Shown in pieces: positions 15,604-47,266 of a stretch of 64,000 nt of DNA. The stretch's first letter is position 1. The number at the start of each line of letters is the position of its first letter. The DNA is from Eutreptiella sp. 'Long Island Sound 2002' (lineage: Eukaryota > Protista > Euglenida). Made by a program: the position numbers and the translations under genes. The notes under the pieces were generated by a model. It was not told the origin of the DNA, made no database searches, and saw only the letters and a list, made by a program, of their open reading frames with translations. The stretch covers positions 26,040,001-26,104,000 of the forward strand of contig OZ038378.1 of assembly GCA_964036045.1 (NCBI GenBank). Reading direction: 5' to 3'.

Positions 15604-15803
15604 NNNNNNNNNNNNNNNNNNNNNNNNNNNNNNNNNNNNNNNNNNNNNNNNNNNNNNNNNNNNNNNNNNNNNNNNNNNNNNNNNNNNNNNNNNNNNNNNN
15701 NNNNNNNNNNNNNNNNNNNNNNNNNNNNNNNNNNNNNNNNNNNNNNNNNNNNNNNNNNNNNNNNNNNNNNNNNNNNNNNNNNNNNNNNNNNNNNNNNNNN
15801 NNN
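15604..15803. other. 200-N assembly gap with flush duplicated flanks (14555-15603 = 15804-16888)
   Basis: Sequence after the gap restarts at CCACAAGCGG (14555). Sequence before the gap ends at GTTGGCGCC, matching 16888. Confidence 0.95.
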
Positions 15804-16475
15804 CCACAAGCGGTGGCCAAAGAAATGTCTTCTTGACCTTTAACATACTCCTTCCGCAGAAGGTGTTGACCCCACATGTGTGCGCATGCATATGCGAGGC
15901 ACTGTTGCCTCACAAATCTTGCACTGCAAGGAGCGGGAAAGGTCAGTGGTCAACCCTTTGTCACCACGATCTGTCGTAAACAAGCCTTCATACGGCTCAC
16001 ACTTCACGGGTGGCACCTTTTGAGGTGCCGTTTGGGCACACCATTCAGCAAGGGCATCCACCACGCAAGTCCCTCGCTTCAGCGACTTCTCAAGATCGAG
16101 TGTCGCCATAATGTGTCGCTGCGCTATACAAAGGGAGCAAAGCAAGGACCAAACACATGGCACAGCCTCTGAAAGGGACACACCAACGGCGAAACGCAAC
16201 GTACTATCAACACCCTATTCAGCCTTGCGCGGAACAACATGGTGCCTACTACCGTCGCTCTGCGGCGAATGCTTTCCTGGGTGCCTACTCCCATCGCTCT
16301 GCGGCGACTGCATTTGTTGTGGTTTAGGTTTCGGCACACACAGGTTTGGGTTTGGGCACCATGCTGGCCTTTGACATATTTTGCAAGGGGAAACGCCCCA
16401 TGGAGCACTTGCCTAAAAAAACGCGGAAAAACGTCGCATGAGTCCCTAACCCACGGGGTTGTGAAACAAACAAAC

Positions 16476-16790
16476 AAGTGGAACACCCCACATTTCACAT
16501 TGTGGGTGGCAGCATCCCGCGCCAGGGGCCCCTTGTCCGCGGGCTGACGTTTGCAGTTAACATGTCTGGGTCAAACAAACAAGTGGAACACCCCACATTT
16601 CACATTGTGGGTGGCAGCATCCCGCGCCAGGGGCCCCTTGTCCGCGGGCTGACGTTTGCAGTTAACATGTCTGGGTCAAACAAACAAGTGGAACACCCCA
16701 CATTTCACATTGTGGGTGGCAGCATCCCGTGCCAGGGGCCCCTTGTCCGCGGGCTGACGTTTGCAGTTAACATGTCTGGGCAACAAACGA
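16476..16790. repeat. 105-bp tandem repeat, 3 copies (degraded duplicate at 15227-15500)
   Basis: AAGTGGAACACCCCACATTTC starts at 16476, 16581 and 16686. Confidence 0.9.
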
Positions 16791-18855
16791 CATTTGTATA
16801 GCGCCTCGTCTTGCGAAATCTGGCGCTCACACTAGAAAAGGGGGCGCCGTTGGTGCCACGCGGAAAAAAGGGGGGCGCCGTTGGCGCCATGTCCCCAGCC
16901 CACTATCTCTCAAAACCCGGGGGGGGGGGGGGGGGGGGGGGGGGCTGGGGGGGGTCGCATACAAGGACCGGGCCCGGCCGCCCCCCCGTGGACGGCTGTT
17001 GGGAGAACCCCCCTCCCCGTTTCTGAAGGGGGGATTTCTATTCTCGAAGAGAAAAGTCCTCCGTTCAGGAACCGAGGAGGGGGTTTCTTTCAGAGCAATA
17101 TTTCCCCAATTGGGAACCAGACTCATCTTCTCTGGGGCCTAGAAAACATGCAAAAGATGAACAGCATGATATTGCGGAGAGCACTAATGAACACACTTAC
17201 GACATATTGTTGCCCTGTGGCCGAGAAGCTCTGCAAGGGAATGGCAAATTGGAAACCCTGAGTGTGGAACTCAGGGGATTAGGACGGGAGGGGGGGGGGC
17301 AAAGGCCACAGCGGAGGCAACTCCCAAATCGACTGTAACCCCGCTGGCCGTCATCGAAGAGGGCTAAACGAGCTGCAGCTACAGATCATTACTCATCAGC
17401 AAGCTAGCCGGATTTAGTTGCCAAGGTGATCCCCAGCCCTAATCAATGTTGCCCTGAAGATGCTGCCCCCCTCTCACCCAGAGACTTTTAGCTGAAAACA
17501 TCAGACACCTAATCGGATGATGTCAATCAGGGGACAAATGGTCTTGAGCCTCAAACAGACAGGGGCCACATGGTGCTTCTCATTACACCTGGCGCATGTG
17601 ATACTAGGTCCTTGACCCTGAAAAACTGCGCCTGTGTTTTACAACACAAAATTGCACACCTCACTAAACAACCAGGCAGGTAAGGTTGGTCTTATGGATT
17701 GGACCATAATCATTCCAAATCCCCCACATGTCATTGCCTGCCACACAACTCTTAGCGAACAAAAAATCGCGTCACGGTCACTGAATGTGCTTGACCAGCC
17801 GTCCCCAGATGTCTGCTCAAAGCGCATACCCTCTTTTCGTTTGCACAGTGTGGAATTCCTTGCACCTTCTTTACTCCATGCCTGTGACCCGTTTGCCCAG
17901 CAACCATTTGCACAGAAACCCCATACATTGTGAGCCCCCATGACCAGCATCCGTGACTGTCCCCTTATTTTCCAACAAAAATATTGCGGCCACAGGACAA
18001 CAACGCTTAGAATTGGTGCATCAAGTGTGCACCGATGCATTGATGGAGCTGTGGACCTAGGCATGTCATGCAGTTCAGTACCAGCATGTGTCCCGGAGTC
18101 CCACGACACCAAGCACAGGATGCAGGTGTGGCCCAAGCGTTGGGGTGGCCACAACATAATGTGTGCCTGCAGCAGTCGATGGCCCTGGGGTTGAGCAACC
18201 ATACACACTGATGGCCATGATGGTAGAAGCAGACGGTTAGGTGCACAGAAAGGAAGCAGGATGGTTTGGTGTGGTATCGACTTCAGGAGAAGGGTTTGGG
18301 ACACCCGTGGGAGGAGGACACTGCTTCTAAGCAAGGTCAGCAATAGCCACTGCATAGCAAATAGTGCAGACTACTTGGCACCATCAGGGGCGCAGCTGGA
18401 GCAACGCATCACGCTCTTCCCATGCTCGATGGGACGAGCACATGTTTCGCTGCCATCAGATGCGTCTGATGGGCCACGATTCGCACGTGAACAAAAGCAA
18501 CACAGGAATGACTCTGAACCAAACAGCTCCCAATCGGGGTCTTCGACAATCAGTTGTGTTTCTGACAAGAGCCTTCCAATGACACCCTTTGACGGACCCC
18601 TTCAACATATGGCTGTTCCCCCCCGTGTCCACTTGTCCTCACTGACATGGGGACAATGCAAACGCTCTTTGACAGGCAGTGTGGAACAGCCAGCTAAAGA
18701 CATACAGTGCTCGACAAACGGTCTTTGACGGTTCTGGAACACAGATACCGTGACAGACAGTCTTTGACAGATCATCGGTGACCACGGGGGGGCCGTCCCC
18801 TCGCTTTTAGACGCGACTCCCCCCCCCCCCAGTAGAAGTGGGCCGAAGGCCCCTA

Positions 18856-18892
<37 letters not shown>

Positions 18893-19070
18893 TTGGAGGG
18901 GGGGGGGTTCAGGGAGGGGCGATTGGGGGGGGGGGGCGGTCGGGAGGGTCAGTTGGGGGGGGGGGTCCAGGTGGGGCGATTTGGGGTGGTGGGGGGGGGG
19001 GCAGGCTCCCGTTACCTCCCCTTGCCCTCCCTCTGGGGTGAGAGCTTGGGCTAGGGTTAGGGCTAGGGTC

Positions 19071-22000
19071 ACCGAGCTGGTGGAACCAGTCTTGGTTTTA
19101 TAACCCTTTTCACCGAGCTGGTGGAACCAGTCTTGGTTTTATAACCCTTTTTAGTGTCTAGGGTGGACCTACCAGGTTTAGCAGCAGCAGCAGCAAGCAG
19201 CAGCAAGCAGCAGCAAGCAAGCAGCAGCACGCGCGAAATGGGGAAAAATCAGAACTCCGTCGTGGTGCTTCAGATTCAGCTGAAATTTTGGTGGATGATA
19301 CCTATGGGTGTGAAGTACAATCACACAAAGTTTGAGCAAGAAACTCAACGGTGGCGGCCGGGAACGGGATTCGCAAGTGGCGGACCTCAGTTTCAAAAAC
19401 TGCAGTTTAGGGCCAAAAACAGCCATTTTTGGGCCAAAAAAGCCCTGGAACACATTCAAAACGGCCAAATGAAGGGAAACGGTGGGTACACTGCACATGT
19501 GGCTTGACTTCCCCATGTCAACGAGCTCTTTGCGCCCCTCTGACTCCATGATATGTCCCGGAAACGGCCCAAAAAGGCCCCCAAAAGCTCCAAATGCCGA
19601 CAGCCACAAACCAAGAATAGGCCATATCTTTGGCTACATGGCTCAAAATGCGATTCCGAGGGCACCTACTCCACCCACAACCCCCCACTTTTTGTGGTTT
19701 CCACCCCTCAGAATTGCCTCAAAGGACGCCTAGACCCCAATACCTAGGCCCACTAGGCTGCGGCAAGCTGCAAGCTCAAGCCCAAACATGTGGGTGCCCA
19801 AATGGGTCAACAGGGTCCAGTAGGGGCAAAAAGATGACTTTTCTCAAAAATGATCCTAGACCATGTGCGACGCTAAAACAAGTGTTTTTGGACCGTTTTG
19901 AGCTTGTGGTGGCCCATTTTGGTCCTCCGAACATCCCAAAATGCCTTGAAAATGGGCTGTTTTGGGACCAAAAATGGGTCAAAAATGGGTCAAAAACACA
20001 TTTTTCCAAACCTCATCCTAGACCATATGGGGTGCACAAACGGGTGAAATGAGCCCATTTTGAGCCCATTTTGGGGCATTTTGGCCCCTTAGAAGTCCAA
20101 AAAGCCTTGAAAGTGGGCCTCGTGGTGATGGGGTTCACTTGCAAGCTGATTTCACTTTGTCAAGAGCCATCAATGTGTGAATCATTCTTGATGTCCCTCA
20201 CCAGTCATAGCTGATGTTCCCCTCCCCCACCAGCTCGGTCCCAATATTCAGTCTTGATTAGGGTCTAGGGTGGACCTACCAGGTTTAGCAGCAGCAGCAG
20301 CAAGCAGCAGCAAGCAGCAACAAGCAGCACGCGCGAAATGGGGAAAAATCAGACATCCGTCGTGGTGCTTCACATTCGGCTGAAATTTTGGTGGATGATA
20401 CCTATGGGTGTGAGGGACAACCACACAAAGTTTGAGCCAGAAACTCAACAGTGGCGGCCGGGAATGGGTGTCGCAAGTGGCGGACCTCAGTTTCAAAAAC
20501 AGCAGTTTAGGGCCAAAAACAGCCATTTTTGGGCCAAAAGAGCCCTAGAACCCATTCAAAACGGCCAAGGAAAGGGAAAGGGTGGGTACACTCCATGTGC
20601 GGCTTGACTTTCTTGTGTCAACGAGCTCTTTGCGGCCCTCTAACTCCATGATATGTCCCGGAAACGGCCCAAAAAGGCCCCCACAAGCCCCAAATTTTGT
20701 GCAGATTGGCTGGCGACAGCCACAAACCAAGAATAGGCCATATCTTTGGCTACATGGCTCAAAACGCGATTCCGAGGGCACCTACTCCACCCGCAACCCC
20801 CCTCGTTTTGTGGTTTCCACCCCTCAAAATTGCCCAAATGGACGCCTAGACCCCCGTACCCAAGCCCAGTAGGCTGCGGCAAGCTGCAAGCTCAAGCCCA
20901 AACAGGTGGGTGCCCAAATGGGTCAATAGGGTCCAATAGGGGCAAAAAGATGACTTTTCTCAAAAATGATCCTAGACCATGTGCGACGCTAAAACAAGTG
21001 TTTTTGGACTGTTTTGAGCTTGGGGTGGCCCATTTTGGTCCTCCGAAAATCCCAAAATGCCTTGAAGATGCGTTGTTTTGTGACCAAAAATGGGTCAAAA
21101 ATGGGTCAAAAATGCATTTTTCCAAAACTCATCCTAGACCATTTGGGGTGCACAAACGGGTAAAATGAGCCTATTTTGAGCCCATTTTGGGGCATTTTGG
21201 CCCCTCACAAGTCCACAAAAGCCTTGAAAGTGGGCCTTGTGGTGAAGGGGATCACTTGCAAGCTGATTCCACCCTGTCAACGGCCTTCAATGTGTAACTC
21301 ATTGGTATCCCTCACCATTCATATCTAATGTTCCCTCCCCCACCAGCTCGGTCCCAATATTCAGTCTTGATTAGGGTCACCGAGCTGGTGGAACCAGTCT
21401 TGGTTTTATAACCCTTTTTAGTGTCTAGGGTGGACCTACCAGGTTTAGCAGCAGCAGCAGCAAGCAGCAGCAAGCAGCAGCAAGCAGCAAGCAGCAGCAC
21501 GCGCGAAATGGGTAAAAATCAGAACTCCGTCGTGGGGCTTCATATTCGGGTGAAATTTTGGTGCATGATACCTATGGGTGTGAAGTACAATCACACAAAG
21601 TTTGAGCAAGAAACTCAACGGTGGTGGCAGGGAACGGGATTCGCAAGTGGCGGACCTCAGTTTCAAAAATGGCAGCTTAGGGCCAAAAACAGCCATTTTT
21701 GGGCCAAAAAAGCCCTGGAACACATTCAAAACAGCCAAACGAAGGGAAACGGTGGGTACACTTCACGTGCGGCTTGACTTCCCCGTGTCAACGAGCTCTT
21801 TGCGGCCCTCTAACTCCATGATATGTCCCGGAAACGGCCCAAAAAGGCCCCCAGAAACTTCAAATGCCGAGAGCCACAAACCAAGAATAGGCCATATCTT
21901 GGGCTACATGGCTCAAAATGCGATTCCGAGGGCACCTACTCCACCCGCAACCCCCCACTTTTTGTGGTTTCCAGCCCTCAGAATTGCCCAAACGGACGCC

Positions 22001-23670
22001 TAGACCCCAATACCTAGGCCCACTAGGCTGCGGCAAGCTGCAAGCTCAAGCCCAAACAGGTGGGTGCCCAAATGGGTCAACAGGGTCCAGTAGGGGCAAA
22101 AAGATGACTTTTCTCAAAAATGATCCTAGACCATGTGCGACGCTAAAACAAGTGTTTTTGGACCGTTTTGAGCTTGTGGTGGCCCATTTTGGTCCTCCGA
22201 AAATTCCAAAATGCCTTGAAAATGGGTTGTTTTGGGACCAAAAATGGGTCAAAAATGCATTTTTCCAAACCTCATCCTAGACCATTTGGGGTGCACAAAC
22301 GGGTGAAATGAGCCCATTTTGAGCCCATTTTGGGGCATTTTGGCCCCTTAGAAGTCCAAAAAGCCTTGAAAGTGGGCCTTGTGGTGATGGGGTTCACTTG
22401 CAAGCTGATTCCACTTTGTCAAGAAGCATCAATGCGTGAATCATTCTTGATGTCCCTCACCAGTCATAGCTGATGTTCCCTCCCCCACCAGCTCGGTCCC
22501 AATATTCAGTCTTGATTAGGGTTAGGGTCACCGAGCTGGTGGAACCAGTCTTGGTTTTATAACCCTTTTTAGTGTCTAGGGTGGACCTACCAGGTTTAGC
22601 AAGCAAGCAGCAAGCAAGCAGCAAGCAGCAAGCAAGCAGCACGCGCGAAATGGGTAAAAATCAGAACTCCGTCGTGGTGCTTCGGATTCGGGTGAAATTT
22701 TGGTGCATGATACCTATGGGTGTGAAGTACAATCACACAAAGTTTGAGCAAGAAACTCAACGGTGGCGGCCGGGAACGGGATTCGCAAGTGGCGGACCTC
22801 AGTTTCAAAAACTGCAGTTTAGGGCCAAAAACAGCCATTTTTGGGCTTAAAAAGCCCTGGAACACATTCAAAACGGCCAAATGAAGGGAAACGGTGGGTA
22901 CACTCCACGTGCGGCTTGACTTCCCCATGTCAACGAGCTCTTTGCGCCCCTCTGACTCCATGATATGTCCCGGAAACGGCCCAAAAAGGCCCCCAGAAGC
23001 TCCAAATGCCGACAGCCACAAACCAAGAATAGGCCATATCTTTGGCTACATGGCTCAAAATGCGATTCCGAGGGCACCTACTCCACCCACAACCCCCCAC
23101 TTTTTGTGGTTTCCAGCCCTCAGAGTTGCCCAAACGGACGCCTAGACCCCAATACCTAGGCCCACTAGGCTGCGGCAAGCTGCAAGCTCAAGCCCAAACA
23201 GGTGGGTGCCCAAATGGGTCAACAGGGTCCAGTAGGGGCAAAAAGATGACTTTTCTCAAAAATGATCCTCGACCATGTGCGACGCTAAAACAAGTGTTTT
23301 TGGACCGTTTTGAGCTTGTGGTGGCCCATTTTGGTCCTCCGAACATCCCAAAATGCCTTGAAAATGGGCTGTTTTGGGACCAAAAATGGGTTAAAAATGG
23401 GTCAAAAATGCATTTTTCCAAACCTCATCCTAGACCATTTGGGGTGCACAAACGGGTGAAATGAGCCCATTTTGAGCCCATTTTGGGGTATTTTGGCCCC
23501 TCAGAAGTCCAAAAAGCCTTGAAAGTGGGCCTTGTGGTGATGGGGTTCACTTGCAAGCCGATTCCACTTTGTCAAGAGCCATCAATGTGTGAATCATTCT
23601 TGATGTCCCTCACCAGTCATAGCTGATGTTCCCTCCCCCACCAGCTCGGTCCCAATATTCAGTCTTGATT
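19071..23670 (+). repeat. Tandem array A: four ~1.1-kb units
   Basis: Heads ACCGAGCTGGTGG at 19071/19112 (41-bp head duplication), 21379 and 22530; unit 2 is headless from ~20260. Tails CCACCAGCTCGGT+CCCAATATTCAGTCTTGATT end at 20259, 21372, 22517 and 23670. Confidence 0.95.
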
Positions 23671-23776
23671 AGGGTTAGGGTTAGGGTCATGGGTAGGGTT
23701 AGGTGTAGGGTTAGGAGCAGGCTGAGGGTTGGGGTGGGCGTTAGAGTCAAGGTTGGGTTCAAGTATAGCGTTGGGG
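23669..23776 (+). repeat. Interstitial telomere-like hexamer tract (3 perfect TTAGGG decaying into variants)
   Basis: TTAGGG x3, then TCATGG GTAGGG TTAGGT GTAGGG TTAGGA.. in 6-nt phase. Confidence 0.9.
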
Positions 23777-25860
23777 TGCTCCACCGCCTGGGCGGGGAGG
23801 GATGCTACGTGGGCAAGGGGAATGAAAAAATTTTTCGGGCGCCTTCGGCGCCACCATATGTATGGCCAGTAGCTATTCATCCTTGGTAACTAAGTGGGCC
23901 CGGAGGGGGGGGGGGGGGGGAGTCGCGTACCGGGACCGAGGAGACGGCCCCCCCGTGTCGGTGACATATGGTCCTTGACGCTTAGACTTGGACGGGCGAA
24001 ATTTTACACACATTTGACAAACAACTTTTGGTAGTCCACCTTTGAAATACAATCTTTCACGGACATTCGTTGAGAGACAGGGTTTGACAGGCGATCATTG
24101 ACAGCCTTTGAGACACAGTCATTGACAGGCAAACTTTGATAGAAAACGTGTGGTAGAGAAATAGCGCTTCTCTGACACACAGTGATTGCCATATACAACC
24201 TACCTGGAAAAAAGCGACAGCCTCAGGCCTACACTCTGTTGGGAGAAAATAGCACCGGTCCTCAAACTCCATTGCTCTAGATGATAGCAGATGATACTTG
24301 CTCTCGGACCCTGCACTGCTAAAACAACAGACAACAGTGGCAGCAAGACCACACTGTGGGCCAACAACAATACAAGACATCTTTGACGGATAGTCTTTGA
24401 CAAAACAGTAAATGACGTACAGTCTTGGACAGACGGTGTTTGATCGGTGGTCTTGCATGGGCAGTCCTGAACAGGCTGCCCATGACAGACAATCCTTTAC
24501 ATGCAGCCCTTGACAAATGGGCTGCGACAGGCTCTCCTTGACACACCGCCTGTGCCAAGCTATTTTTGATGCAAAGTGGGCATAGGTCATCGGCCAGGTT
24601 GACATGACCGTGTGCATATGGCATGGAGCACGTGGTGCAGACATTGGGAACAAACAGTACCCAGGGCTTCGGCGTTTGTCATCCTCTCTGGAAGCCCGGG
24701 TGGCGCTTTCACAGGCGAGGGGTGTACCACGGGCAGAACCTGACCAGGGGGAGGGGCACGCAAATAAGGAGGACTGGCCGAGTGGCGGTGACAGTGAATC
24801 CCATTCCAACACGCACATAAACAGGAAATCACAGCCAGCCATGAGCCATCAGCCGATGGAACATGTAAATGGTTCCCACGTCCATGCAAGATCCCTGCCC
24901 ATGGCACCCATGGTGACAGCCCATGTCGCCTGCCAGGTCCACTTGGATTAAAAATGACTAAGATCAATACTTATTGGCCAGGGATCGCGACGCTATCCGT
25001 TTCAATGAAAACCCTGACATTTCATGAAACGCCTTGGGAGGGAGGGGGGGGCATGTCTGCAGGGAAGCGCTGTGCATTGTGGAGGATAGCGTGGATAATA
25101 AAGCTGTCCTTCTTTGGGGGGGGGGGGTCCCATCTCCAAATCTGGGCAACATCTTGGGGACGTTTTGCAAGCCTACGCACCTTATTTCTTGATATAAGTT
25201 GCAGGAGCATGCCACAGGATGGAGTCACATGCGCAGGTGTTGCTTCGCTTCATGCTTCGCTTTGCTTCGTCTTCCAATGATTTCTTCACTGTGTACAGGT
25301 ATGTCGTCTCCCTTGTGACATGGCTGTTTGTGACTGTTTGTGTCACGTCTCACCATGTGTGACCATGGCCCAGGACCACGGATCCTGCCCTCATCACTTA
25401 AAGCGAGACCGCCCCTGACAGCCCATCCCTGAACAAGCCAGGAGGAGCAGGAACCCCCCCCCTCGCCCCCCATTCTAGGCGGGCACATACACAGGGATGG
25501 AGGCGGGAAGCGTTTCAACACTGCTACCCCCAAACTTCGATATGGCAGACAGGAGTACCCTCAGCCACCGGGGACGCCGCCCAGGCGCACTGCAGAGCCC
25601 CCTGCAAGCGCCTCAAGAGGTCACCACAATTGCGGCCTCGGGCACCATATCTTGGGGTACGTTGCGGGGGCGCTGCATGCTACAGCATCACGAGCTGCCT
25701 GGGGCGTCTGCACGTTGCAGGCGCGCCGCCGAATGCACCTGGGGGGGGGTGGGATTGTTGCCCCCACCACCAAGCCGCACGTGCTGCATGGCACACTGCA
25801 CTGCAGAGCTACTCGGGGGTGCACCAACATCCCCCCACCCGAGCCGCTCTATTGGGGCAC

Positions 25861-34900: not shown

Positions 34901-35850
34901 ACCCAGAACCACAACCATAACCGTGAGCCTGGACATACTACCTGAACCGGTTCATCATGGGGTATAAGCGATCGACCTCCTTGTCGATGATCATGTGCAA
35001 CAGCCAGTGTGCATCCGTAGTGCGAAGTTTGGTTCCTGGGGTGGCAATATTGGACTTGCAGATTTCCACAGTCTTGGAGGGGCTGTTGAAGAAACTCAGC
35101 AGCGTGTTGTCCTGACAGGGCAAGCGAAAAAGGGTGGGGCACCAAACCTACGGAGCCTGAACCCGGGACGTAATGACTGGAGATGAACACAAATTGCAGC
35201 CTTGGCCCAGAGGCATCTAGAGGCCATTTTTTTTGAAGAAATGGATGGCATACAGCTCCCTTGTGGCAGAGTCGACGCACACAGGGCCACAACAGACCAG
35301 CCGAGTGCAGATAGAAGACGATTGGAAGGGATCACGGGGGGGATGTCTCCTCGCTTTTATACGCGACCCCCCCCCCAGTAGAAGTGGGCCGAAGGCCCCC
35401 AAGAGGGGGGGGGGGGGGGGGTTCAGGGAGGGGCGACGGGGGGGGGGGGGCGGTTGGGAGGGTCGGTTGGGGGGGGGGGTCCAGGTGGGGCGATTTGGGG
35501 TGGTGAGGGGGGGGCGGGGGGGGGGGGGGGCAGGCTCCCCTTACCTCCCCTTGCCCTCAATCTAACCATACCATCACCATAAACCTAACCCTAACCTTTG
35601 CAGCCAGTTGGTTTGGCCATGCCAGCCATGTCAATTGGGCTGCACAAGATCCCCGAAATTTCGTTCATGGCTGCTTTTGCCACATCATTGCTCTCCATTG
35701 TGGACCCCAACACTCATTCTAACCCGAGCCTAGGGTGAGAGCTAGAGCTAGGGGCAGGGCTAGGGTTAGGGTCACCGAGCTGGTGGAACCAGTCTTGGTT
35801 TTATAACCCTTTTTAGTGTCTAGGGTGGACCTACCAGGTTTAGCAGCAGC

Positions 35851-35881
<31 letters not shown>

Positions 35882-38800
35882 CGCGCGAAATGGGCAGAAA
35901 TCAGAACTCCGTCGTGGTGCTTTGGATTTGGGTGAAATTTTGGTGCATGATACCTATGGGTGTGAAGTACAATCACACAAAGTTTCAGCGAGAAACTCAA
36001 CGGTGGCGGCCGGGAACGGGATTCGCAAGTGGCGGACCTCAATTTCAAAAACTGCAGTTTAGGGCCAAAAACAGCCATTTTTGGGCCAAAAAGACCCTAG
36101 AACACATTCAAAACGGCCAAACGAAGGGAAACAGTGGGTACACTCCACGTGCGGCTTGACTTCCCCATGTCAACGAGCTCTTTGCGCCCCTCTGACTCCA
36201 TGATATGTCCCGGAAACGGCCCAAAAAGGCCCCCAAAAGCTCCAAATGCCGACAGCCACAAACCAAGAATAGGCCATATCTTTGGCTACATGGCTCAAAA
36301 TGCGATTCCGAGGGCACCTACTCCACCCGCAACCCCCCACTTTTTGTGGTTTCCAGCCCTCAGAATTGCCCAAATGGACGCCTAGACCCCAATACCTAGG
36401 CCCACTAGGCTGCGGCAAGCTGCAAGCTCAAGCCCAAACAGGTGGGTGCCCAAATGGGTCAACAGGGTCCAGTAGGGGCAAAAAGATGACTTTTCTCAAA
36501 AATGATCCTAGACCATGTGCGACGCTAAAACAAGTGTTTTTGGACCGTTTTGAGCTTGTGGTGGCCCATTTTGGTCCTCCGAAAATCCTCAAATGCCTTG
36601 AAAATGGGCTGTTTTGGGACCAAAAATGGGTCAAAAATGCATTTTTCCAAACCTCATCCTAGACCATTTGGGGTGCACAAACGGGTAAAATGAGCCCATT
36701 TTGAGCCCATTTTGGGGCATTTTGGCCCCTCAGAAGTCCAAAAAGCCTTGAAAGTGGGCCTCGTGGTGATGGGGTTCACTTGCAAGCTGATTCCACTTTG
36801 TCAAGAGCCATCAATGTGTGAATCATTCTTGATGTCCCTCACCAGTCATAGTTGATGTTCCCTCCCCCACCAGCTCGGTCCCAATATTAAGTCTTGATTA
36901 GGGCAAGGGTTAGGGTTAGGGTCACCGAGCTGGTGGAACCAGTCTTGGTTTTGTAACCCTTTTTAGTGTCTAGGGTGGACCTACTAGGTTTACCAGCAGC
37001 AAGCAGCAAGCAGCAGCACGCGCGAAATGGGTAAAAATCATAACTCCGTCGTGGTGCTTCGGATTCGGGTGAAATTTTGGTGGATGATACCTATGGGTGT
37101 GAAGTACAATCACACAAAGTTTCAGCAAGAAACTCAACGGTGGCGGCCGGGAACGGGATTCGCAAGTGGCGGACCTCAATTTCAAAAACTGCAGTTCAGG
37201 GCCAAAAACAGCCATTTTTGGGCCAAAAAGACCCTAGAACACATTCAAAACGGCCAAACGAAGGGAAACAGTGGGTACACTCCACGTGTGGCTTGACTTC
37301 CCCGTGTCAACGAGCTCTTTGCGGCCCTCTAACTCCATGATATGTCCCGGAAACGGCCCAAAAAGGCCCCCAGAAGCTCCAAATGCCGACAGCCACAAAC
37401 CAAGAATAGGCCATATCTTTGGCTACATGGCTCAAAATGCGATTCCGAGGGCACCTACTCCACCCGCAACCCCCCACTTTTTGTGGTTTCCAGCCCTCAG
37501 AGTTGCCCAAACGGACGCCTAGACCCCAATACCTAGGCCCACTAGGCTGCGGCAAGCTGCAAGCTCAAGCCCAAACAGGTGGGTGCCCAAATGGGTCAAC
37601 AGGGTCCAGTAGGGGCAAAAAGATGACTTTTCTCAAAAATGATCCTAGACCATGTGCGACGCTAAAACAAGTGTTTTTGGAGCTTGTGGTGGCCCATTTT
37701 GGTCCTCCGAAAATCCTCAAATGCCTTGAAAATGGGCTGTTTTGGGACCAAAAATGGGTCAAAAATGCATTTTTCCAAACCTCATCCTAGACCATTTGGG
37801 GTGCACAAACGGGTAAAATGAGCCCATTTTGAGCCCATTTTGGGGCATTTTGGCCCCTCAGAAGTCCAAAAAGCCTTGAAAGTGGGCCTCGTGGTGATGG
37901 GGTTCACTTGCAAGCTGATTCCACTTTGTCAAGAGCCATCAATGTGTGAATCATTCTTGATGTCCCTCACCAGTCATAGTTGATGTTCCCTCCCCCACCA
38001 GCTCGGTCCCAATATTAAGTCTTGATTAGGGCAAGGGTTAGGGTTAGGGTCACCGAGCTGGTGGAACCAGTCTTGGTTTTATAACCCTTTTTAGTGTCTA
38101 GGGTGGACCTACTAGGTTTACCAGCAGCAAGCAGCAAGCAGCAGCACGCGCGAAATGGGCAGAAATCATAACTCCGTCGTGGGGCTTCAGATTCGGGTGA
38201 AATTTTGGTGGATGATACCTATGGGTGTGAAGTACAATCACACAAAGTTTCAGCGAGAAACTCAACGGTGGCGGCCGGGAACGGGATTCGCAAGTGGCGG
38301 ACCTCAATTTCAAAAACTGCAGTTCAGGGCCAAAAACAGCCATTTTTGGGCCAAAAAAGCCCTAGAACACATTCAAAACGGCCAAACGAAGGGAAACAGT
38401 GGGTACACTCCACGTGCGGCTTGACTTCCCCGTGTCAACGAGCTCTTTGCGGCCCTCTAACTCCATGATATGTCCCGGAAACGGCCCAAAAAGGCCCCCA
38501 GAAGCTCCAAATGCCGACAGCCACAAACCAAGAATAGGCCATATCTTTGGCTACATGGCTCAAAATGCGATTCCGAGGGCACCTACTCCACCCGCAACCC
38601 CCCACTTTTTGTGGTTTCCAGCCCTCAGAATTGCCCAAATGGACGCCTAGACCCCAATACCTAGGCCCACTAGGCTGCGGCAAGCTGCAAGCTCAAGCCC
38701 AAACAGGTGGGTGCCCAAATGGGTCAACAGGGTCCAGTAGGGGCAAAAAGATGACTCTTCTCAAAAATGATCCTAGACCATGTGCGACGCTAAAACAAGT

Positions 38801-41800
38801 GTTTTTGGAGCTTGTGGTGGCCCATTTTGGTCCTCCGAAAATCCTCAAATGCCTTGAAAATGGGCTGTTTTAGGACCAAAAAAGGGTCAAAAATGCATTT
38901 TTCCAAACCTCATCCTAGACCATTTGGGGTGCACAAACGGGTGAAATGAGCCCATTTTGAGCCCATTTTGGGGCATTTTGGCCCCTCAGAAGTCCAAAAA
39001 GCCTTGAAAGTGGGCCTTGTGGTGATGGGGTTCACTTGCAAGCTGATTCCACTTTGTCAAGAGCCAACAATGTGTGAATCATTCTTGATGTCATAGCTCA
39101 TGTTCCCTCCGCCACCAGCTCGGTCCCAATATTCAGTCTTGATTAGGGCAAGGGTTAGGGTTAGGGTCACCGAGCTGGTGGAACCAGTCTTGGTTTTATA
39201 ACCCTTTTTAGTGTCTAGGGTGGACCTACTAGGTTTACCAGCAGCAAGCAGCAAGCAGCAGCACGCGCGAAATGGGTAAAAATCATAACTCCGTCGTGGG
39301 GCTTCAGATTCGGGTGAAATTTTGGTGGATGATACCTATGGGTGTGAAGTACAATCACACAAAGTTTCAGCGAGAAACTCAACGGTGGCGGCCGGGAACG
39401 GGATTCGCAAGTGGCGGACCTCAATTTCAAAAACTGCAGTTCAGGGCCAAAAACAGCCATTTTTGGGCCAAAAAAGCCCGGGAACACATTCAAAACGGCC
39501 AAACGAAGGGAAACGGTGGGTACACTCCACGTGTGGCTTGACTTCCCCGTGTCAACGAGCTCTTTGCGGCCCTCTAACTCCATGATATGTCCCGGAAACG
39601 GCCCAAAAAGGCCCCCAAAAGCTCCAAATGCCGACAGCCACAAACCAAGAATAGGCCATATCTTTGGCTACATGGCTCAAAATGCGATTCCGAGGGCACC
39701 TACTCCACCCGCAACCCCCCACTTTTTGTGGTTTCCACCCCTCAGAATTGCCCAAATGGACGCCTAGACCCCAATACCTAGGCCCACTAGGCTGCGGCAA
39801 GCTGCAAGCTCAAGCCCAAACAGGTGGGTGCCCAAATGGGTCAACAGGGTCCAGTAGGGGCAAAAAAATTAATTTTCTCAAAAATGATCCTCGACCATGT
39901 GCGACGCTAAAACAAGTGTTTTTGGACCGTTTTGAGCTTGTGGTGGCCCATTTTGGTCCTCCGAAAATCCCAAAATGCCTTGAAAATGGGCTGTTTTGGG
40001 ACCAAAAATGGGTTAAAAATGGGTCAAAAATGCATTTTTCCAAACCTCATCCTAGACCATTTGGGGTGCACAAACGGGTAAAATGAGCCCATTTTGAGCC
40101 CATTTTGGGGCATTTTGGCCCCTCAGAAGTCCAAAAAGCCTTGAAAGTGGGCCTCGTGGTGATGGGGTTCACTTGCAAGCTGATTCCACTTTGTCAAGAG
40201 CCATCAATGCGTGAATCATTCTTGATGTCCCTCACCAGTCATAGTTGATGTTCCCTCCCCCACCAGCTCGGTCCCAATATTAAGTCTTGATTAGGGCAAG
40301 GGTTAGGGTTAGGGTCACCGAGCTGGTGGAACCAGTCTTGGTTTTATAACCCTTTTTAGTGTCTAGGGTGGACCTACCAGGTTTAGCAGCAGCAGCAGCA
40401 AGCAGCAAGCAAGCAGCACGCGCGAAATGGGTAAAAATCATAACTCCGTCGTGGGGCTTCAGATTCGGGTGAAATTTTGGTGGATGATACCTATGGGTGT
40501 GAAGTACAATCACACAAAGTTTCAGCGAGAAACTCAACGGTGGCGGCCGGGAACGGGATTCGCAAGTGGCGGACCTCAATTTCAAAAACTGCAGTTCAGG
40601 GCCAAAAACAGCCATTTTTGGGCCAAAAAGACCCTAGAACACATTCAAAACGGCCAAACGAAGGGAAACAGTGGGTACACTCCACGTGTGGCTTGACTTC
40701 CCCGTGTCAACGAGCTCTTTGCGGCCCTCTAACTCCATGATATGTCCCGGAAACGGCCCAAAAAGGCCCCCAGAAGCTCCAAATGCCGACAGCCACAAAC
40801 CAAGAATAGGCCATATCTTTGGCTACATGGCTCAAAATGCGATTCCGAGGGCACCTACTCCACCCGCAACCCCCCACTTTTTGTGGTTTCCAGCCCTCAG
40901 AGTTGCCCAAACGGACGCCTAGACCCCAATACCTAGGCCCACTAGGCTGCGGCAAGCTGCAAGCTCAAGCCCAAACAGGTGGGTGCCCAAATGGGTCAAC
41001 AGGGTCCAGTAGGGGCAAAAAGATGACTCTTCTCAAAAATGATCCTAGACCATGTTTGGCGCTAAAACAAGTGTTTTTGGACCGTTTTGAGCTTGTGGTG
41101 GCCCATTTTGGTCCTCCGAAAATCCCAAAATGCCTTGAAAATGGGCTGTTTTGGGACCAAAAATGGGTTAAAAATGGGTCAAAAATGCATTTTTCCAAAC
41201 CTCATCCTAGACCATTTGGGGTGCACAAACGGGTAAAATGAGCCCATTTTGAGCCCATTTTGGGGCATTTTGGCCCCTCAGAAGTCCAAAAAGCCTTGAA
41301 AGTGGGCCTCGTGGTGATGGGGTTCACTTGCAAGCTGATTCCACTTTGTCAAGAGCCATCAATGTGTGAATCATTCTTGATGTCCCTCACCAGTCATAGT
41401 TGATGTTCTCTCCCCCACCAGCTCGGTCCCAATATTCAGTCTTGGTTAGGGTTAGGGTCAAGGGAAAGGTTTGGGGGTAGGGTTAGGAGTAGGCTGAGGG
41501 TTGGGGTGGGCATTAGAGTCAAGGTTGGGTTCAAGGATAATGTTGGGGTGCAAAGTGGACAAAATGGGCAAGGGGAATGAAAAAAAAAATTTCGGGCGCC
41601 TTCGGCGCCACCATATGTATGGCCAGTAGCTGTTGACCCTTGGCAACTAAGTGGGCCCGGAGGGCAGGGAGGGGGGGGGAGGGGGGGGGGGGGGAGTCGC
41701 GTACCAGAACCGAGGAGACGTCCCCCCGTGGAAGGGATCGTGGACGAGTGCAGAGGGCAGTCTGTAAGCTGTAGGCTGTTGAGGGCAATGGCCGTAGAGG

Positions 41801-44800: not shown

Positions 44801-47266
44801 ATGACAATCCACCAACAGCGCCGGGGTCAGGCAACGACGGTGGTTGACCGGTCATCGACAGTAGTCAGCAGGTACAACACGACAGCTGGCGGCCAACCGA
44901 CACGCTTTCGGTGGGCTGGCGGTTAAATCAGCGGTTGACGCTTCACCGCTGGCAGTTGGCCAGGAGCCGCCAGCCTAGAGGACCATTCTGGGGAAAAGCT
45001 GCATGCACCAGCCATTTTGTCAAGCAAGTCGAATGTCCGGAAGCGAAAACTCAAAAAATCAATACATATGGACGTGCACGAACATGCCCACTTCAGTGCA
45101 TGCACACACACGTTGTATGCTTCCAGCGTTGGCAACTGCAACTTTCCCCGCGTGCCTGTGACGTTGACCCACCGCAGCACTGCTTCGTCCTTGGTCAAAT
45201 ACCGCAGGGTTTCGCACTGGCGGCTGGTCTTGAGGTTGCGCTGCTTCGGAGCGCGGCTCCAATCCTTGCTGTACTCGATTATGAACGCCTTGTCGTTGTA
45301 TTCAATGTCTGGAACTGGCAGGATTTCCAACTCCTGGAAGTGGTGGCGTGGAAGTGGTGGGAAGAGTGTTTTCGAGGGGTCAGCGGACTGTTGAATAATG
45401 GATCATTTCTTCACGATCACCAGCTCACAGTCACCAGGGCGTCCGCGAGAGGGAAATTGCTTGTGCCATGCAGTCTAAATGGATTCCCTTGCCTGCACAA
45501 TCATAATAAAATAGATTTGTCTTGTCGCCAACATTATGACATACTGTCGGCTCTGTTTGCTCACTTCCATGCAATAAAAAAACTATATTTCAGTGGTTCT
45601 CTTCCTCAAACACAACAATGGCACTGGACATCAATCGAGATGTAGCCCCTCTTGAGCCGCGAGTGAGCTGTGATCGTGGGCACACACCCAATCCAACTGG
45701 TAGACACCTCCGGCAACAGCAGCAGCGGGTGTGCATTACATCTTGATAAAACTTTTGCCGCAAAATTAAACAAATTCAGTGCATGTTTGTTTGGTATCTG
45801 ATGACGCAGGCCACAAAGCCTAATTGTGACTTGCAACTAGGACCGAGCTGGGTTTGTGGGTCTCCTGAACCTGGTTGAAATACGGCTCTCATTTTCACCT
45901 CAAAATGGACCATGCATGGCGCCACGGCGTGAGAGACACCTCATTGAACACCTATTTGCAATCATTTGATGGTCTAATCAATGTGGAAGAAGAGCGGCCC
46001 TCATTGGAGACACCTGCTTGATCGTCCTGAACTTTCAGGATGATTGTCCCGAAAACAGGCTGAAAACGGTCATTTTTGGACACCAAATTGGCCATACAAC
46101 AGGCTAGACAGCTCAAAATCACATGAACCTTGTTTCAAGTGATGCATGTTTGCTCTGCAGTCATTTTGAGCTGCTTGGATGCCCATTTTGAGCCACACTG
46201 TCCCAAAAAAAGACTTTTTTTGTGCCTGTTGCTTGCTGCTGCTGCTTGCTGCTTGCTACTAAAATCCGTTTCTCACCTTGGACCCGAAGAAGGGTTGTAA
46301 AACCCCCACTGGGAGACCCAGCTCAGTAATCAAGACTTACAACTAGGACTGAGCTGGGTCCTAGTCTTGCTCATTGCCTCAGAAATTGCTGTGGAAGAAA
46401 ACTAGCCTGCGTTGGAGATGTTTGCTTGACACACTGGTGATTGTCCTGAACCTTCAGGAGGATTGCCCTCAAAAATGGCTGAAAAAAGGCTCATTTACAC
46501 CTGAAAATGGACCATCGAATGGCACCACGGCACAAGAGACACCTCATTGAACACCCGTTTACAATCATTTGATGCACCAATCAATGTGGAAGAAGAATGA
46601 CTCTCATTGGAGACACCTACTTGACACAGTGGCGATCGTCCTGGGCTTTCATGATGATCGTCCTGAAAATTGGCTGAAAACGGTTGTTTTTTTGGACACC
46701 AAATTGGCCATACAACAGGCTGGACAGCTCAGAATCGGCTCCGGGGGGGGGGAGGGGGAATCCTGGTTACCAAGCTGGGTCTCCCAGTGGAGGTTTTACA
46801 ACCCTTCTTAGGGTCCAGGGTGAGAACCATATTTTAGCAGCAGCAGCAGCAAGCAGCAGCAACAGACGCAAAAAAAAGTCTTTTTTGGAACATCGTGTCT
46901 CTAAAGCGGCATCTAAGTAGCTGAAAATGGCCGCAGAGCAAATGCGCATCACCTGAAAGAAGTTGCATGTTATTGGGTCGTTTCTCCAAATACCTCACAT
47001 CCCCCACCCCATGGGCCGTGTGCGAAGACGAGTGAGACTGGGAGAACGAATGAAGGGGCAGCAAGCCTCTTTTGGCAGGTTGGAGGGCATGGAGGTGCAG
47101 AGAGCGTTGCACACAGTGGCAAGAAATTGGAATGCAAGAGTGGCAGGGGCAACAGGGAGGTTGGCACCTCATACTCCTCTTCGTCATCACTATCAGACTT
47201 GTACTCGGACACTGGACGGTATTCTGTCGCACGTGGAGTGAAAGGGGTGGCGAGGGCGGCCGCCAT
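25861..47266 (-). CDS. corA: CorA-family Mg2+/Co2+ transporter, 7 exons, 401 aa: join of 47266-47168, 45333-45112, 43190-43002, 35111-34942, 33051-32775, 31813-31696, 25991-25861
   Basis: All six introns are GT-AG with consistent phases (1206 nt total). Motifs: LRWVNVTG, VHPLFIEDIL..RSKVE, DQVSLVL, LRTTDAHWLLHMIIDKEVD, YNDLRDH, MNRTMYLLTLITALFIPAQFLTGLFGMNF, MPWLEWKYGY. Confidence 0.93.
26735..26850 (+). repeat. Dispersed repeat family C, partial copy
   Basis: GGGCGGAAATGCTACGTCACCCCT..ATTCTCG..TCCCCAACAAA.GGGACAAAATC matches the reverse complement of 63185-63250. Confidence 0.7.
27010..27420. repeat. Degenerate ~10-bp CCCCATTT(T/C) tandem repeats
   Basis: More than ten CCCCATTT-like units in two clusters. 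Confidence 0.8.
27981..28149. repeat. 85-bp tandem duplication
   Basis: TGCTCCACCAAAGCTTCAATATAAG.. starts at 27981 and 28066. Confidence 0.9.
29219..29290 (+). pseudogene. tRNA-Cys(GCA)-like sequence, 72 nt, degenerate
   Basis: A box TGGCCGAATGG (29226), B box GGTTCAAACCC (29269), anticodon-loop-like CCGCAGA. The stems pair poorly. Confidence 0.6.
29317..29388 (-). pseudogene. tRNA-Cys(GCA)-like sequence, 72 nt, degenerate, inverted relative to the first
   Basis: Minus strand: CCACCCC C GGTCGAATGGTAACACA CCAAG CCGCAGA TTTTT TGGTC GGCGG TTCGAAT CCCGG TTGGTGG A. The acceptor stem pairs 5/7 and the B box is perfect. Confidence 0.65.
31696..31813 (-). CDS. corA: CorA exon 6 (TM1)
   Basis: GCCCAG| ASSRSLKDDYSYMQQDAMNRTMYLLTLITALFIPAQFLT G |GTGCCC. 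Confidence 0.93.
32775..33051 (-). CDS. corA: CorA exon 5 (stalk helices)
   Basis: CTCTCTCAG| ..MQLDKVRDLL..YNDLRDHILTILDYVASLQ |GTGTAT. Confidence 0.92.
33555..33608 (-). mobile_element. Solo TIR-like end related to the CACG family
   Basis: Reverse complement CAGGCCCGGGACGCCGGGCCCGGACCCTTTACGCCGACAC(n) parallels the right TIR of element C. No partner end or TSD was found. Confidence 0.45.
34942..35111 (-). CDS. corA: CorA exon 4
   Basis: CCTGTCAG| DNTLLSFFNSPSKTVEICKSNIATPGTKLRTTDAHWLLHMIIDKEVDRLYPMMNRF R |GTAGTA. Confidence 0.92.
35774..41447 (+). repeat. Tandem array B: five ~1.1-kb units
   Basis: Heads at 35774, 36924, 38052, 39169 and 40317. Tails end at 36899, 38027, 39144, 40292 and 41447. 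All four junctions read AGGGCAAGGGTTAGGGTTAGGGTC. Confidence 0.95.
41446..41548 (+). repeat. Interstitial telomere-like hexamer tract, homologous to 23669-23776
   Basis: TTAGGG x2 followed by in-phase degenerate hexamers. Confidence 0.88.
42751..42813. repeat. 20-bp tandem repeat x3 (GGGTCGGTATGACATAGGGG)
   Basis: Three perfect copies, directly visible. Confidence 0.95.
43002..43190 (-). CDS. corA: CorA exon 3
   Basis: TTGGCAG| VHPLFIEDILNDAERSKVENLGANG..MDQVSLVLQ |GTCTCG. Confidence 0.93.
43600..44290. repeat. Degenerate ~60-70-bp tandem repeat (GGGTGTGGCCC..GGATAYRTAGCCACAAT); inverted relative at 42430-42510
   Basis: GGATAY..GCCACAAT recurs at 43716, 43826, 44147, 44200 and 44257. Confidence 0.6.
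45112..45333 (-). CDS. corA: CorA exon 2
   Basis: CACTTCCAG| ELEILPVPDIEYNDKAFIIEYS..LRWVNVTGTRGKLQLPTLEAYN |GTGTGT. Confidence 0.9.
45822..46327 (-). mobile_element. 506-bp relative (family B) of the 1.1-kb array unit, complete copy
   Basis: Head ACTGAGCTGGG..GGTTTTACAACCCTTCTT.GGGTCCA.GGTG..TTTAG(AGC)n. Tail CCCAGCTCGGT+CCTAGTTGCAAGTCACAATT (20 nt). Confidence 0.8.
46328..46975. mobile_element. Second family-B unit: tail and body on minus (46328-46735), head inverted on plus (46769-46975)
   Basis: The tail CCCAGCTCAGT+CCTAGTTGTAAGTCTTGATT abuts the head of the first unit. 46490-46735 matches 45890-46120. The head TT|ACCAAGCTGGGTCTCCC at 46769 matches the reverse complement of 46130-46327. 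Confidence 0.75.
47168..47266 (-). CDS. corA: CorA exon 1 (start)
   Basis: MAAALATPFTPRATEYRPVSEYKSDSDDEEEYE |GTGCCA, phase 0 matching exon 2. Assigned by phase and position, not by domain motif. Confidence 0.75.

What the first reader, a model, noticed from the sequence alone, without database searches (positions are those of the whole stretch)
19071..23670. The 1.1-kb unit has Helentron/HINE-like asymmetric ends, so it may be a rolling-circle element in its own right
Seen in sequence: the 13-bp ACCGAGCTGGTGG sits at the very start of each unit and its inverse CCACCAGCTCGGT lies exactly 20 nt before the end. Units end in GATT and have an AGC/AGCA microsatellite ~70 nt from the head. The head contains overlapping mini-hairpins (CACC-GAGCT-GGTG, AACCA-GTCT-TGGTT, GGTT-TTAT-AACC). 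No TSD surrounds the units. Established knowledge: Helentron-associated non-autonomous elements (DINE-1/HINE type) have asymmetric subterminal IRs, a microsatellite and TT ends, and rolling-circle elements form head-to-tail arrays. Inference: the arrays are rolling-circle concatemers captured inside a TIR element.
Basis: partly seen in the sequence, partly recalled or inferred. Interest (0 to 1): 0.8.

Follow-up and report, generated by a model that had tools for sequence, protein, structure and literature searches.

The report
Telomere-repeat-homing Helitron-like passenger element
The 1.1-kb unit is a non-coding jumping element with about 8,000 copies that lands, always in one direction and without a scar, at GGGT^TAGGG of telomere-type repeats; it is built like the passengers of rolling-circle (Helitron-type) transposons, but its arrays are not rolling-circle concatemers and its enzyme was not found.

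Summary
The sequence features are real. The 13-mer occurs 18 times against 0.06 expected, sits at the unit start, and its inverse lies 20 nt before the end. An AGC microsatellite follows 68 nt in.

TTAGGG is this genome's true telomere repeat.

The unit moves on its own:
- There are 7,968 heads and 6,545 tails genome-wide.
- Copies lie in several vehicle types and in short non-vehicle tracts.
- 240 empty vehicles carry the uninterrupted tract and 980 are filled, at five or more hexamer positions.
- One filled site minus the element equals the commonest empty sequence exactly.

The architecture matches Helentron/Helitron2 passengers (HINE/DINE-1), except for a clear 3' stem-loop.

About 700 nt of the body is 75-78% identical to the 5' arm of an intact RepHel Helitron family in this genome.

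The concatemer-capture idea fails:
- None of 2,770 tail-to-head junctions is direct; each keeps at least one hexamer.
- Array 1 is a mix of unrelated copies.
- Array 2 grew by local duplication of unit plus spacer.
- The TIR element is a landing pad.

No RepHel with matching ends was found. This scan reached the same family reading three times before on other DNA (s1-202942, s1-219460, s1-203012).

The parts
19070..20258 (+). Array 1, unit 1 (1189 nt; 41-bp duplication of the head at 19070-19151)
20265..21371 (+). Array 1, unit 2; lacks the first ~62 nt of the head and joins at TAGGGT microhomology. Nearest relative is a copy at C1:13.09 Mb (97.4%), against at most 92.5% to any unit in the window
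21372..21377 (+). Spacer: one telomere hexamer, TAGGGT
21378..22516 (+). Array 1, unit 3. It is 98.4-98.8% identical to copies on other chromosomes but 96.8% to its closest relative in the window
22517..22528 (+). Spacer: two hexamers, TAGGGTTAGGGT
22529..23669 (+). Array 1, unit 4, followed by degenerate TTAGGG-like repeats of the vehicle
21379..21391 (+). 5' sub-terminal inverted repeat ACCGAGCTGGTGG (example in unit 3). CTGGT inside it pairs with ACCAG 3 nt downstream, forming the head hairpin
22485..22497 (+). 3' sub-terminal inverted repeat CCACCAGCTCGGT (example in unit 3), 19-20 nt before the 3' end
21447..21499 (+). AGC/AAGC microsatellite, 68 nt from the head (example in unit 3)
18783..23957 (+). 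Vehicle 1: non-autonomous TIR transposon. Imperfect TIRs of about 48 bp (CACGGGGGGGCCGTC...), a poly-G minisatellite, and an internal (C/T)TAGGG tract that holds array 1
18775..18782 (.). Vehicle 1 target-site duplication TCGGTGAC (second copy at 23958-23965)
35333..41730 (+). Vehicle 2: same TIR family, TSD GAAGGGAT (35325-35332 and 41731-41738); holds array 2
35773..41446 (+). Array 2: five units (35773-36898, 36923-38026, 38051-39143, 39168-40291, 40316-41446). The four spacers are identical 24-nt TAGGGCAAGGGTTAGGGTTAGGGT. The units are each other's closest relatives (97.4-98.8%), so the array grew by local duplication of unit plus spacer
45823..46328 (-). 0.5-kb sister-family copy with the same end code: head TACTGAGCTGGG with hairpin CTGGG/CCCAG. 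Its head abuts the tail of the next copy (46329-46358) with no spacer
46755..46975 (+). Partial sister-family copy (head ACCAAGCTGGG..., then the AGC microsatellite)

Best explanation
The 1.1-kb unit is a non-autonomous DNA transposon of the Helitron2/Helentron-passenger (HINE/DINE-1-like) type.

Inferred mechanism: a RepHel (HUH nuclease plus Pif1 helicase) supplied in trans cuts one strand at the two ends. It is guided by the 13-nt asymmetric inverted repeat and the 5' hairpin. It then transfers the strand into single-stranded target DNA between the two T's of GGGT^TAGGG on the G-rich strand. That would give one fixed orientation and no duplication.

Shown:
- The target, the orientation and the scarless insertion.
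- Mobility independent of the vehicle.
- Recent activity.
- Homology of the body to a RepHel element.

Inferred:
- That a RepHel is the enzyme.
- That the transfer is single-stranded or rolling-circle.

The TIR 'vehicle' is a separate cut-and-paste element. Its native five-to-seven-hexamer tract makes it a landing pad. Arrays arise from repeated hits into the same tract, each leaving at least one hexamer, and from later local duplication of unit plus spacer. Some copies probably also spread by riding in vehicles.
For: Copy number and ends: 7,968 exact heads and 6,545 exact tails, so there is no 5'-truncation bias.

Target and orientation:
- At least 69 of 83 sampled heads follow GGGT, and the rest follow one-mismatch variants.
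- At least 58 of 81 sampled tails are followed by TTAGGG.
- All lie in the G-strand orientation.
- TTAGGG is the real telomere repeat at four contig ends.

Empty and filled sites:
- 240 vehicles carry the uninterrupted tract.
- 980 are filled, after the 2nd to the 6th hexamer.
- L029 minus the element equals the commonest 74-nt empty sequence.

Independence from the vehicle:
- Units lie in at least three vehicle types and in non-vehicle tracts (L014, L027, L030, L009).
- Unit 3 is 98.7% identical to a copy (L002) in a different vehicle type on another chromosome.

End code kept in three families with different bodies (1.1, 0.5 and 1.7 kb), with covariation:
- Inverted repeat: ACTGAGCTGGG with CCCAGCTCAGT.
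- Hairpin: CTGGT/ACCAG becomes CTGGG/CCCAG.

The layout matches the published DINE-1/HINE and Helitron2 descriptions (PMC4067079, PMC5148889).

The genome has at least 863 candidate RepHel sites; the 150 that were scored all pass Pfam's cut-off, and many lie in open frames of 1,400-2,600 aa.

Body homology:
- Unit positions 297-1009 are 75-78% identical to the 5' arm of RepHel family C.
- That arm has the same order: head, AAGC microsatellite, body.
- It is contiguous with the RepHel ORF in at least 11 copies.

Telomere-repeat-homing Helitrons with fixed orientation are described in Paramecium (PMC13085455).
Against: No RepHel element with ACCGAGCTGG ends was found. I looked in:
- 25.5 kb around a family C copy.
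- Two further C-type loci from another public assembly that shares 99%-identical RepHel proteins with this genome.
- The DNA between two family B copies.
- Head-tail pairing over 22 Mb.
- A screen for tails in foreign contexts.

Family B ends in a canonical hairpin plus CTAG. Family C starts TTACTACACC next to (TA)n. Neither matches.

The expected 3' stem-loop is not significant.

The body homology could reflect shared modules rather than descent.

No circle or single-strand intermediate was observed; only assembled contigs of public runs were available.
Confidence: 0.6

Rival explanations
1. The unit is moved by a site-specific recombinase acting on a circular copy, for example a tyrosine recombinase of a Crypton, DIRS, VIPER or TATE-like element. 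The circle junction (tail repeat, about 20 nt, hexamer, head repeat) would recombine with genomic TTAGGG. That would also give a fixed orientation and no scar.
For: The two 13-nt arms face each other across the junction and form a strong stem (-21 kcal/mol, z -5.4). Insertion is scarless, oriented and hexamer-specific. An earlier scan note reports a VIPER/TATE-type element nearby; from my own knowledge, not checked here, TATE elements of Leishmania sit in telomeric hexamers.
Against: The arms sit asymmetrically around the crossover point (about 19 nt on one side, 1 nt on the other). The non-array insertion L037 has no repeated core on its two sides. The nearby locus L031 shares nothing with the unit. 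No recombinase gene with these ends was seen. The layout matches HINE point by point.
Confidence: 0.12
2. The unit is a telomere-repeat-specific non-autonomous retroelement, SINE-like, mobilised by a TRAS/SART-like or Penelope/Athena-like reverse transcriptase.
For: It is telomere-repeat specific and forms head-to-tail stacks. One unit lacks its 5' end. Unit words occur in RNA libraries.
Against: There is no poly(A) or other 3' repeat belonging to the element. Head and tail counts are nearly equal. Both ends are conserved with inverted-repeat covariation. There is no Rfam ribozyme or RNA family hit. The only reverse-transcriptase-like ORF found next to a tail is a nested insertion inside a unit.
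Confidence: 0.05
3. The unit is not mobile itself. It is an internal satellite of the TIR element that spreads only when the vehicle transposes, and grows by unequal crossing-over.
For: 980 vehicles are filled against 240 empty. Array 2 and several giant arrays are clonal duplications with identical spacers.
Against: Units occur outside vehicles and in different vehicle families. Insertion points differ between vehicles. Array 1 units are closer to copies on other chromosomes than to their neighbours. Related families with other bodies keep the same ends.
Confidence: 0.04

Closest known systems
HINE / DINE-1 (Helentron-associated interspersed elements; Thomas et al. 2014, PMC4067079)
   Same: 13-bp sub-terminal inverted repeats placed asymmetrically; a short inverted repeat whose 5' half is nested in the 5' repeat; a microsatellite plus central tandem repeats; insertion at TT without an evident duplication; non-coding; very high copy number; a tendency to form tandem arrays.
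   Different: The target is one position of the telomere hexamer (GGGT^TAGGG) in one orientation, not any T-rich site. There is no clear 3' stem-loop. No Helentron (Rep-Hel-endonuclease) partner was found. The host is a protist, not an animal.
Helitron2 (e.g. FoHeli of Fusarium, PMC5148889; Bao and Jurka 2013, PMC3627910)
   Same: Asymmetric terminal inverted repeat with the 3' copy about 20-40 bp from the end; a hairpin at the 5' end; a T(T/C) target; no duplication.
   Different: No partner is known here, there is no 3' hairpin, and the target is telomere-repeat specific.
Telomere-capping Helitrons of Paramecium aurelia (PMC13085455, 2026)
   Same: Helitron-type elements and their ORF-less, satellite-rich derivatives are flanked on both sides by telomeric repeats of one polarity. 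Strand-specific insertion into telomere repeats was proposed for them.
   Different: In Paramecium the elements sit at chromosome ends, the repeats read as the C-rich strand, and the autonomous copies are known. Here the sampled copies are interstitial (in TIR-transposon tracts and short internal tracts), read with the G-rich strand, and the autonomous copy is unknown.
TRAS/SART telomere-repeat-specific LINEs of Bombyx (from my own knowledge, not checked here)
   Same: Insertion at one fixed position of the telomere repeat, in one orientation, with stacking in arrays.
   Different: Those are retroelements with a poly(A) tail, reverse transcriptase and 5' truncation; none of these is seen here.

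Membership tests
HINE / DINE-1 (Helentron passengers) | 12-15 bp sub-terminal inverted repeats: the 5' copy at or near the terminus, the 3' copy tens of bp inside | tested here: met
   A 13-nt repeat sits 1 nt from the 5' end, and its inverse 19-20 nt from the 3' end, in all full units. It covaries in the sister family.
HINE / DINE-1 (Helentron passengers) | Short inverted repeat or hairpin whose 5' half is nested in the 5' sub-terminal repeat | tested here: met
   CTGGT (inside the repeat) pairs with ACCAG. The fold is -6.9 kcal/mol, z -2.85. The sister family has the compensatory pair CTGGG/CCCAG.
HINE / DINE-1 (Helentron passengers) | Stem-loop or palindrome near the 3' end | tested here: inconclusive
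   The last 46 nt fold no better than shuffles (z +0.66). Only a 3-bp TCA/TGA mini-hairpin and a 6-nt palindrome (AATATT) are present.
HINE / DINE-1 (Helentron passengers) | Insertion at a TT dinucleotide without target duplication | tested here: met
   Insertion is at GGGT^TAGGG. The filled site L029 minus the element equals the empty vehicle sequence. L037 shows no duplication. A cryptic 6-bp duplication inside arrays is not excluded.
HINE / DINE-1 (Helentron passengers) | Microsatellite and central tandem repeats | tested here: met
   An (AGC/AAGC)n run lies 68 nt from the head, with 21-nt and 11-nt internal repeats and sub-repeats of about 160 nt.
HINE / DINE-1 (Helentron passengers) | An autonomous Helentron (Rep, helicase and AP endonuclease) sharing the termini | tested here: not met
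   None was found in the samples I could reach. The one RepHel read in full (family C) has Rep, PIF1, SAP and DnaJ domains and no endonuclease. The search was not exhaustive.
Helitron2 | Asymmetric terminal inverted repeat, T(T/C) target and a RepHel partner without endonuclease | tested here: inconclusive
   The ends and the target fit. The partner was not found.
Canonical Helitron (Helitron1) | 5'-TC, 3'-CTRR, a GC-rich hairpin 10-12 nt from the 3' end, insertion at A^T | tested here: not met
   The unit ends ...CTTGAT, has no 3' hairpin, and inserts at T^T. By contrast, RepHel family B of this genome does end in a hairpin plus CTAG.
Rolling-circle concatemer (element-only head-to-tail multimer) | Tail joined directly to head with no host DNA between | tested here: not met
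   There are 2,770 junctions with a spacer of 30 nt or less. Of the first 100, 97 have spacers of 8+6n nt. Only 9 genome-wide have fewer than 8 nt, all 7 nt, and none is direct. The 0.5-kb sister family does show one direct joint.
Telomere-capping Helitrons (Paramecium type) | Flanked by telomere repeats of one polarity and located at chromosome ends | tested here: inconclusive
   Polarity and flanks are met. All sampled copies are internal. The four telomeric contig ends I read are pure repeat over 400 nt. Subtelomeres were not surveyed.

The most novel reading that the evidence does not exclude
A lineage of Helitron-type transposases in euglenids has evolved to read the telomeric G-strand hexamer as its target, independently of the Paramecium case. 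Its passengers have colonised a second transposon family whose internal telomere-like tract acts as a portable landing pad. One mobile element thereby creates and spreads safe-harbour sites for another. The same enzyme may also act at real telomeres.
Probability: 0.35. Interest if true: 0.65.

Novelty: new variant of a known kind. Interest (0 to 1): 0.5.

Why it matters
Target-specific Helitron-type elements are rare, and telomere-repeat homing has so far been described only in Paramecium (2026).

This is a second, very abundant and recently active case. It offers hundreds of paralogous empty and filled sites that fix the insertion point to one phosphodiester bond of the hexamer. That gives a clean substrate for testing how a HUH transposase chooses its target and strand.

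It also shows a two-tier arrangement: a TIR transposon carries the landing pad for another element. That explains how internal telomere-like tracts and kilobase satellites spread through a 2.3-Gb genome.

For annotation, the arrays should not be read as captured concatemers.

Tried and rejected
- **Rfam scan of the window:** no family, so no ribozyme or retrozyme reading.
- **VIPER/TATE-type locus noted 17 kb upstream (L031):** no similarity to the unit.
- **Coding potential of the 140-aa frame in the body:** 52% protein identity at 77% DNA identity to the family C arm, as expected without constraint.
- **Partner hunt 1:** family C copy plus 10 kb upstream and 5.5 kb downstream; no head or tail motif.
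- **Partner hunt 2:** DNA between two clustered family B copies. It holds a canonical hairpin plus CTAG end and captured exons. A 14-of-15 match to the head in reverse orientation is probably chance.
- **Partner hunt 3:** pairing of the first 100 heads and tails on contig 1. Every apparent long element proved to be ordinary units with mutated tails.
- **Partner hunt 4:** tails in foreign upstream context (237 hits). These gave a 1.7-kb non-autonomous family, other short families, and one 8.9-kb reverse-transcriptase-like element that is nested inside a unit, so it is not a partner.
- **Partner hunt 5:** RepHel relatives from public assemblies (L057-L060). C-type copies have (TA)n-side ends. 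The only Helentrons with an endonuclease come from a 39%-GC organism.
- **Representative search with the family B N-terminus:** nothing useful.
- **Reads:** only assembled contigs of public runs were available, so circles could not be tested; no direct tail-head joint stood out.
Full report
**Observation**

The window holds nine copies of a 1.1-kb unit: four at 19070-23669 and five at 35773-41446. ACCGAGCTGGTGG or its inverse occurs 18 times, against 0.06 expected.

- The forward copy begins each full unit.
- The inverse copy is followed by exactly 20 nt ending GATT.
- An AGC/AAGC microsatellite starts 68 nt in.
- Unit 2 of array 1 lacks its first ~62 nt, and unit 1 has a 41-bp head duplication.

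The description needs one addition. Every unit is preceded by (T/C)TAGGGT and followed by TAGGG. Spacers between units are whole hexamers: 6, 12 or 24 nt once boundaries are drawn as Y-ACCGAG...CTTGAT.

**What the unit is**

It is a high-copy dispersed family. The head 25-mer has 7,968 exact matches in the 2.28-Gb genome and the tail 25-mer has 6,545. Controls gave none.

The near-equal counts argue against a 5'-truncating, LINE-like mode. Copies up to 99% identical to unit 3 lie on many contigs.

In 28 fetched loci plus the window:
- At least 69 of 83 heads follow GGGT, and the rest follow one-mismatch variants.
- At least 58 of 81 tails are followed by TTAGGG.
- The orientation is always that of the G-rich strand.

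(TTAGGG)n is the true telomere repeat of this genome. It stands in the proper polarity at four contig ends.

**The vehicle**

Both arrays lie in members of one TIR family. The TIRs are imperfect and about 48 bp long. The TSDs are exact 8-bp copies: TCGGTGAC for 18783-23957 and GAAGGGAT for 35333-41730.

A pattern bridging the vehicle's internal tract found 240 empty vehicles with an uninterrupted run of five to seven hexamers. A pattern for the left junction found 980 filled vehicles, with the unit after the 2nd, 3rd, 4th, 5th or 6th hexamer.

The single-unit vehicle L029, with the element removed, gives exactly the commonest 74-nt empty sequence. The tract therefore belongs to the vehicle. 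The unit arrived later, at different positions, precisely and without added or lost bases.

**Independence from the vehicle**

- Units also sit in two other vehicle types (L029 type and L004 type).
- They also sit in short internal telomere-like tracts with unique flanks (L014, L027, L030, L009).
- A 1.7-kb family with the same head and tail (L037) is inserted at GGGGT^TACGATT. That site is a single partial hexamer, and there is no duplication.

**How the arrays formed**

Genome-wide there are 2,770 tail-to-head junctions with a spacer of 30 nt or less.
- Among the first 100 (49 loci), the spacers measured from ...TTGA to ACCG... are 8, 14, 20 or 26 nt in 97 cases.
- Six of the 15 loci with several listed junctions mix different lengths.
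- Only nine junctions in the genome are shorter than 8 nt. All are 7 nt, a one-T loss. None is a direct joint.

In array 1:
- Unit 2 is closest to a copy 13 Mb away (97.4%) and at most 92.5% identical to any unit in the window.
- Unit 3 is 98.4-98.8% identical to copies on other chromosomes but 96.8% to its closest relative in the window.

In array 2, the five units are each other's nearest relatives (97.4-98.8%) and share an idiosyncratic CAAGGG spacer.

Array 1 is therefore a pile-up of independent insertions. Array 2 grew by local duplication of unit plus spacer, and so did the giant arrays on contig 1 with their identical spacers. Element-only rolling-circle concatemers captured by a TIR element are not what is seen.

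The 0.5-kb sister family at 45823-46358 does show one direct tail-head joint.

**Link to Helitrons**

Published definitions:
- DINE-1/HINE: 13-bp sub-terminal inverted repeats, a short inverted repeat nested in the 5' one, a 3' stem-loop, a TT target, a microsatellite and central repeats.
- Helitron2: an asymmetric terminal inverted repeat with the 3' copy 20-40 bp inside, hairpins, and a T(T/C) target.

The unit meets all of these except the 3' stem-loop (z +0.66). The head hairpin has z -2.85.

The end code is conserved in three families with different bodies, and it covaries:
- ACTGAGCTGGG pairs with CCCAGCTCAGT.
- CTGGT/ACCAG becomes CTGGG/CCCAG.

The genome has at least 863 candidate RepHel sites; the 150 that were scored all pass Pfam's cut-off, and many lie in long open frames.

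One family (C) has a 2,535-aa ORF with Rep, PIF1, SAP and DnaJ domains. It begins (TA)n|TTACTACACC..., then an (AAGC)n microsatellite, then an arm 75-78% identical to unit positions 297-1009. That is the same order of parts as in the unit. The arm is contiguous with the ORF in at least 11 copies, three of them next to listed Rep hits. Divergence in the arm is not coding-like.

**What is missing**

No RepHel with the unit's ends was found.
- Family B ends in a canonical hairpin plus CTAG.
- Family C has its own termini beside (TA)n.
- Family A could not be read.
- Screens by head-tail pairing and by tails in foreign context found only non-autonomous relatives and one nested reverse-transcriptase-like element.
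- Public runs were available only as contigs, so circles are untested.

**Verdict**

I read the unit as a non-autonomous Helitron2/HINE-like element with an unusual, strand-specific telomere-hexamer target (confidence 0.6).

Rivals:
- A site-specific recombinase acting on a circle (0.12).
- A retroelement (0.05).
- A vehicle-bound satellite (0.04).
- The remainder is left for an unknown enzyme.

Three earlier follow-ups of this scan on other DNA of the same genome reached the same family reading, also without finding the enzyme.

This report adds:
- The empty and filled landing-pad evidence.
- The junction census that rejects the concatemer reading.
- The termini of RepHel families B and C.
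- Two further families that share the end code.

Noticed in passing
L035:5740 to L032:2060 (G000:C6:28321740-28328060): An element of about 6.4 kb ('X') with a 1,304-aa ORF that has no Pfam hit. It has at least 2,437 candidate copies, and the 39 other copies that were scored are 97-98% identical. It is bounded on both sides by (TA)n and by inward-facing copies of the family C Helitron head.
   Followed up: partly
L032:4290 to L033:1894; also L057 and L058: Family C RepHel (2,535 aa) ends in SAP and DnaJ domains. A repeated hairpin motif (GGTGTACTCTTAACGGAGTTACC) flanks its ORFs. Its 5' end abuts (TA)n in three copies, and the same head recurs inverted across (TA)n.
   Followed up: partly
L034 (G000:C6:9810500-9816800): Family B Helitron has a canonical 3' end (10-bp GC-rich hairpin, then ATTTACACTAG|T). 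The DNA between clustered copies carries kinase-like exon fragments, as in gene capture. Copies of this family cluster 12-28 kb apart at several loci.
   Followed up: partly
L045+L046 (G000:C2:18287830-18300900): An 8.9-kb element with ORFs of 765 and 1,831 aa is nested in a unit just before the 3' inverted repeat. It has reverse-transcriptase-like and RNase-H-like motifs by eye; the two C-terminal open frames I scanned (915 and 289 aa) have no Pfam hit. It ends in (CCCAAC)n.
   Followed up: partly
G000:C1:112470892-112518455 and C1:118147198-118178115: Giant uniform arrays of the unit: 42 listed copies at a period of about 1,114 nt, and more than 23 at a period of 1,145 nt with identical 14-nt spacers. 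These are satellite-like expansions.
   Followed up: no
L042 (G000:C3:148946600-148949720): A further family: a tail with the same 3' inverted repeat, followed after a non-telomeric spacer by a head variant TCACCGAGGTGGTGGAAACGG.
   Followed up: no
window 13489-16990, 15223-15428, 16467-16788: A third member of the TIR family (right end ...CCCCCCCGTG at 16990) holds 103-105-nt tandem repeats instead of the telomere-like tract and units.
   Followed up: no
runs X16-X19 (estuary metatranscriptomes): Contigs from RNA libraries match parts of the unit at up to 100% over about 90-110 nt. The element may be transcribed, or DNA may have been carried over.
   Followed up: partly
spacers in several loci (e.g. 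L004, L020): Some spacers contain TTAGCCCTAGGG, a recurrent non-telomeric variant (GCCC) inside the tracts. Its origin is unexplained.
   Followed up: no
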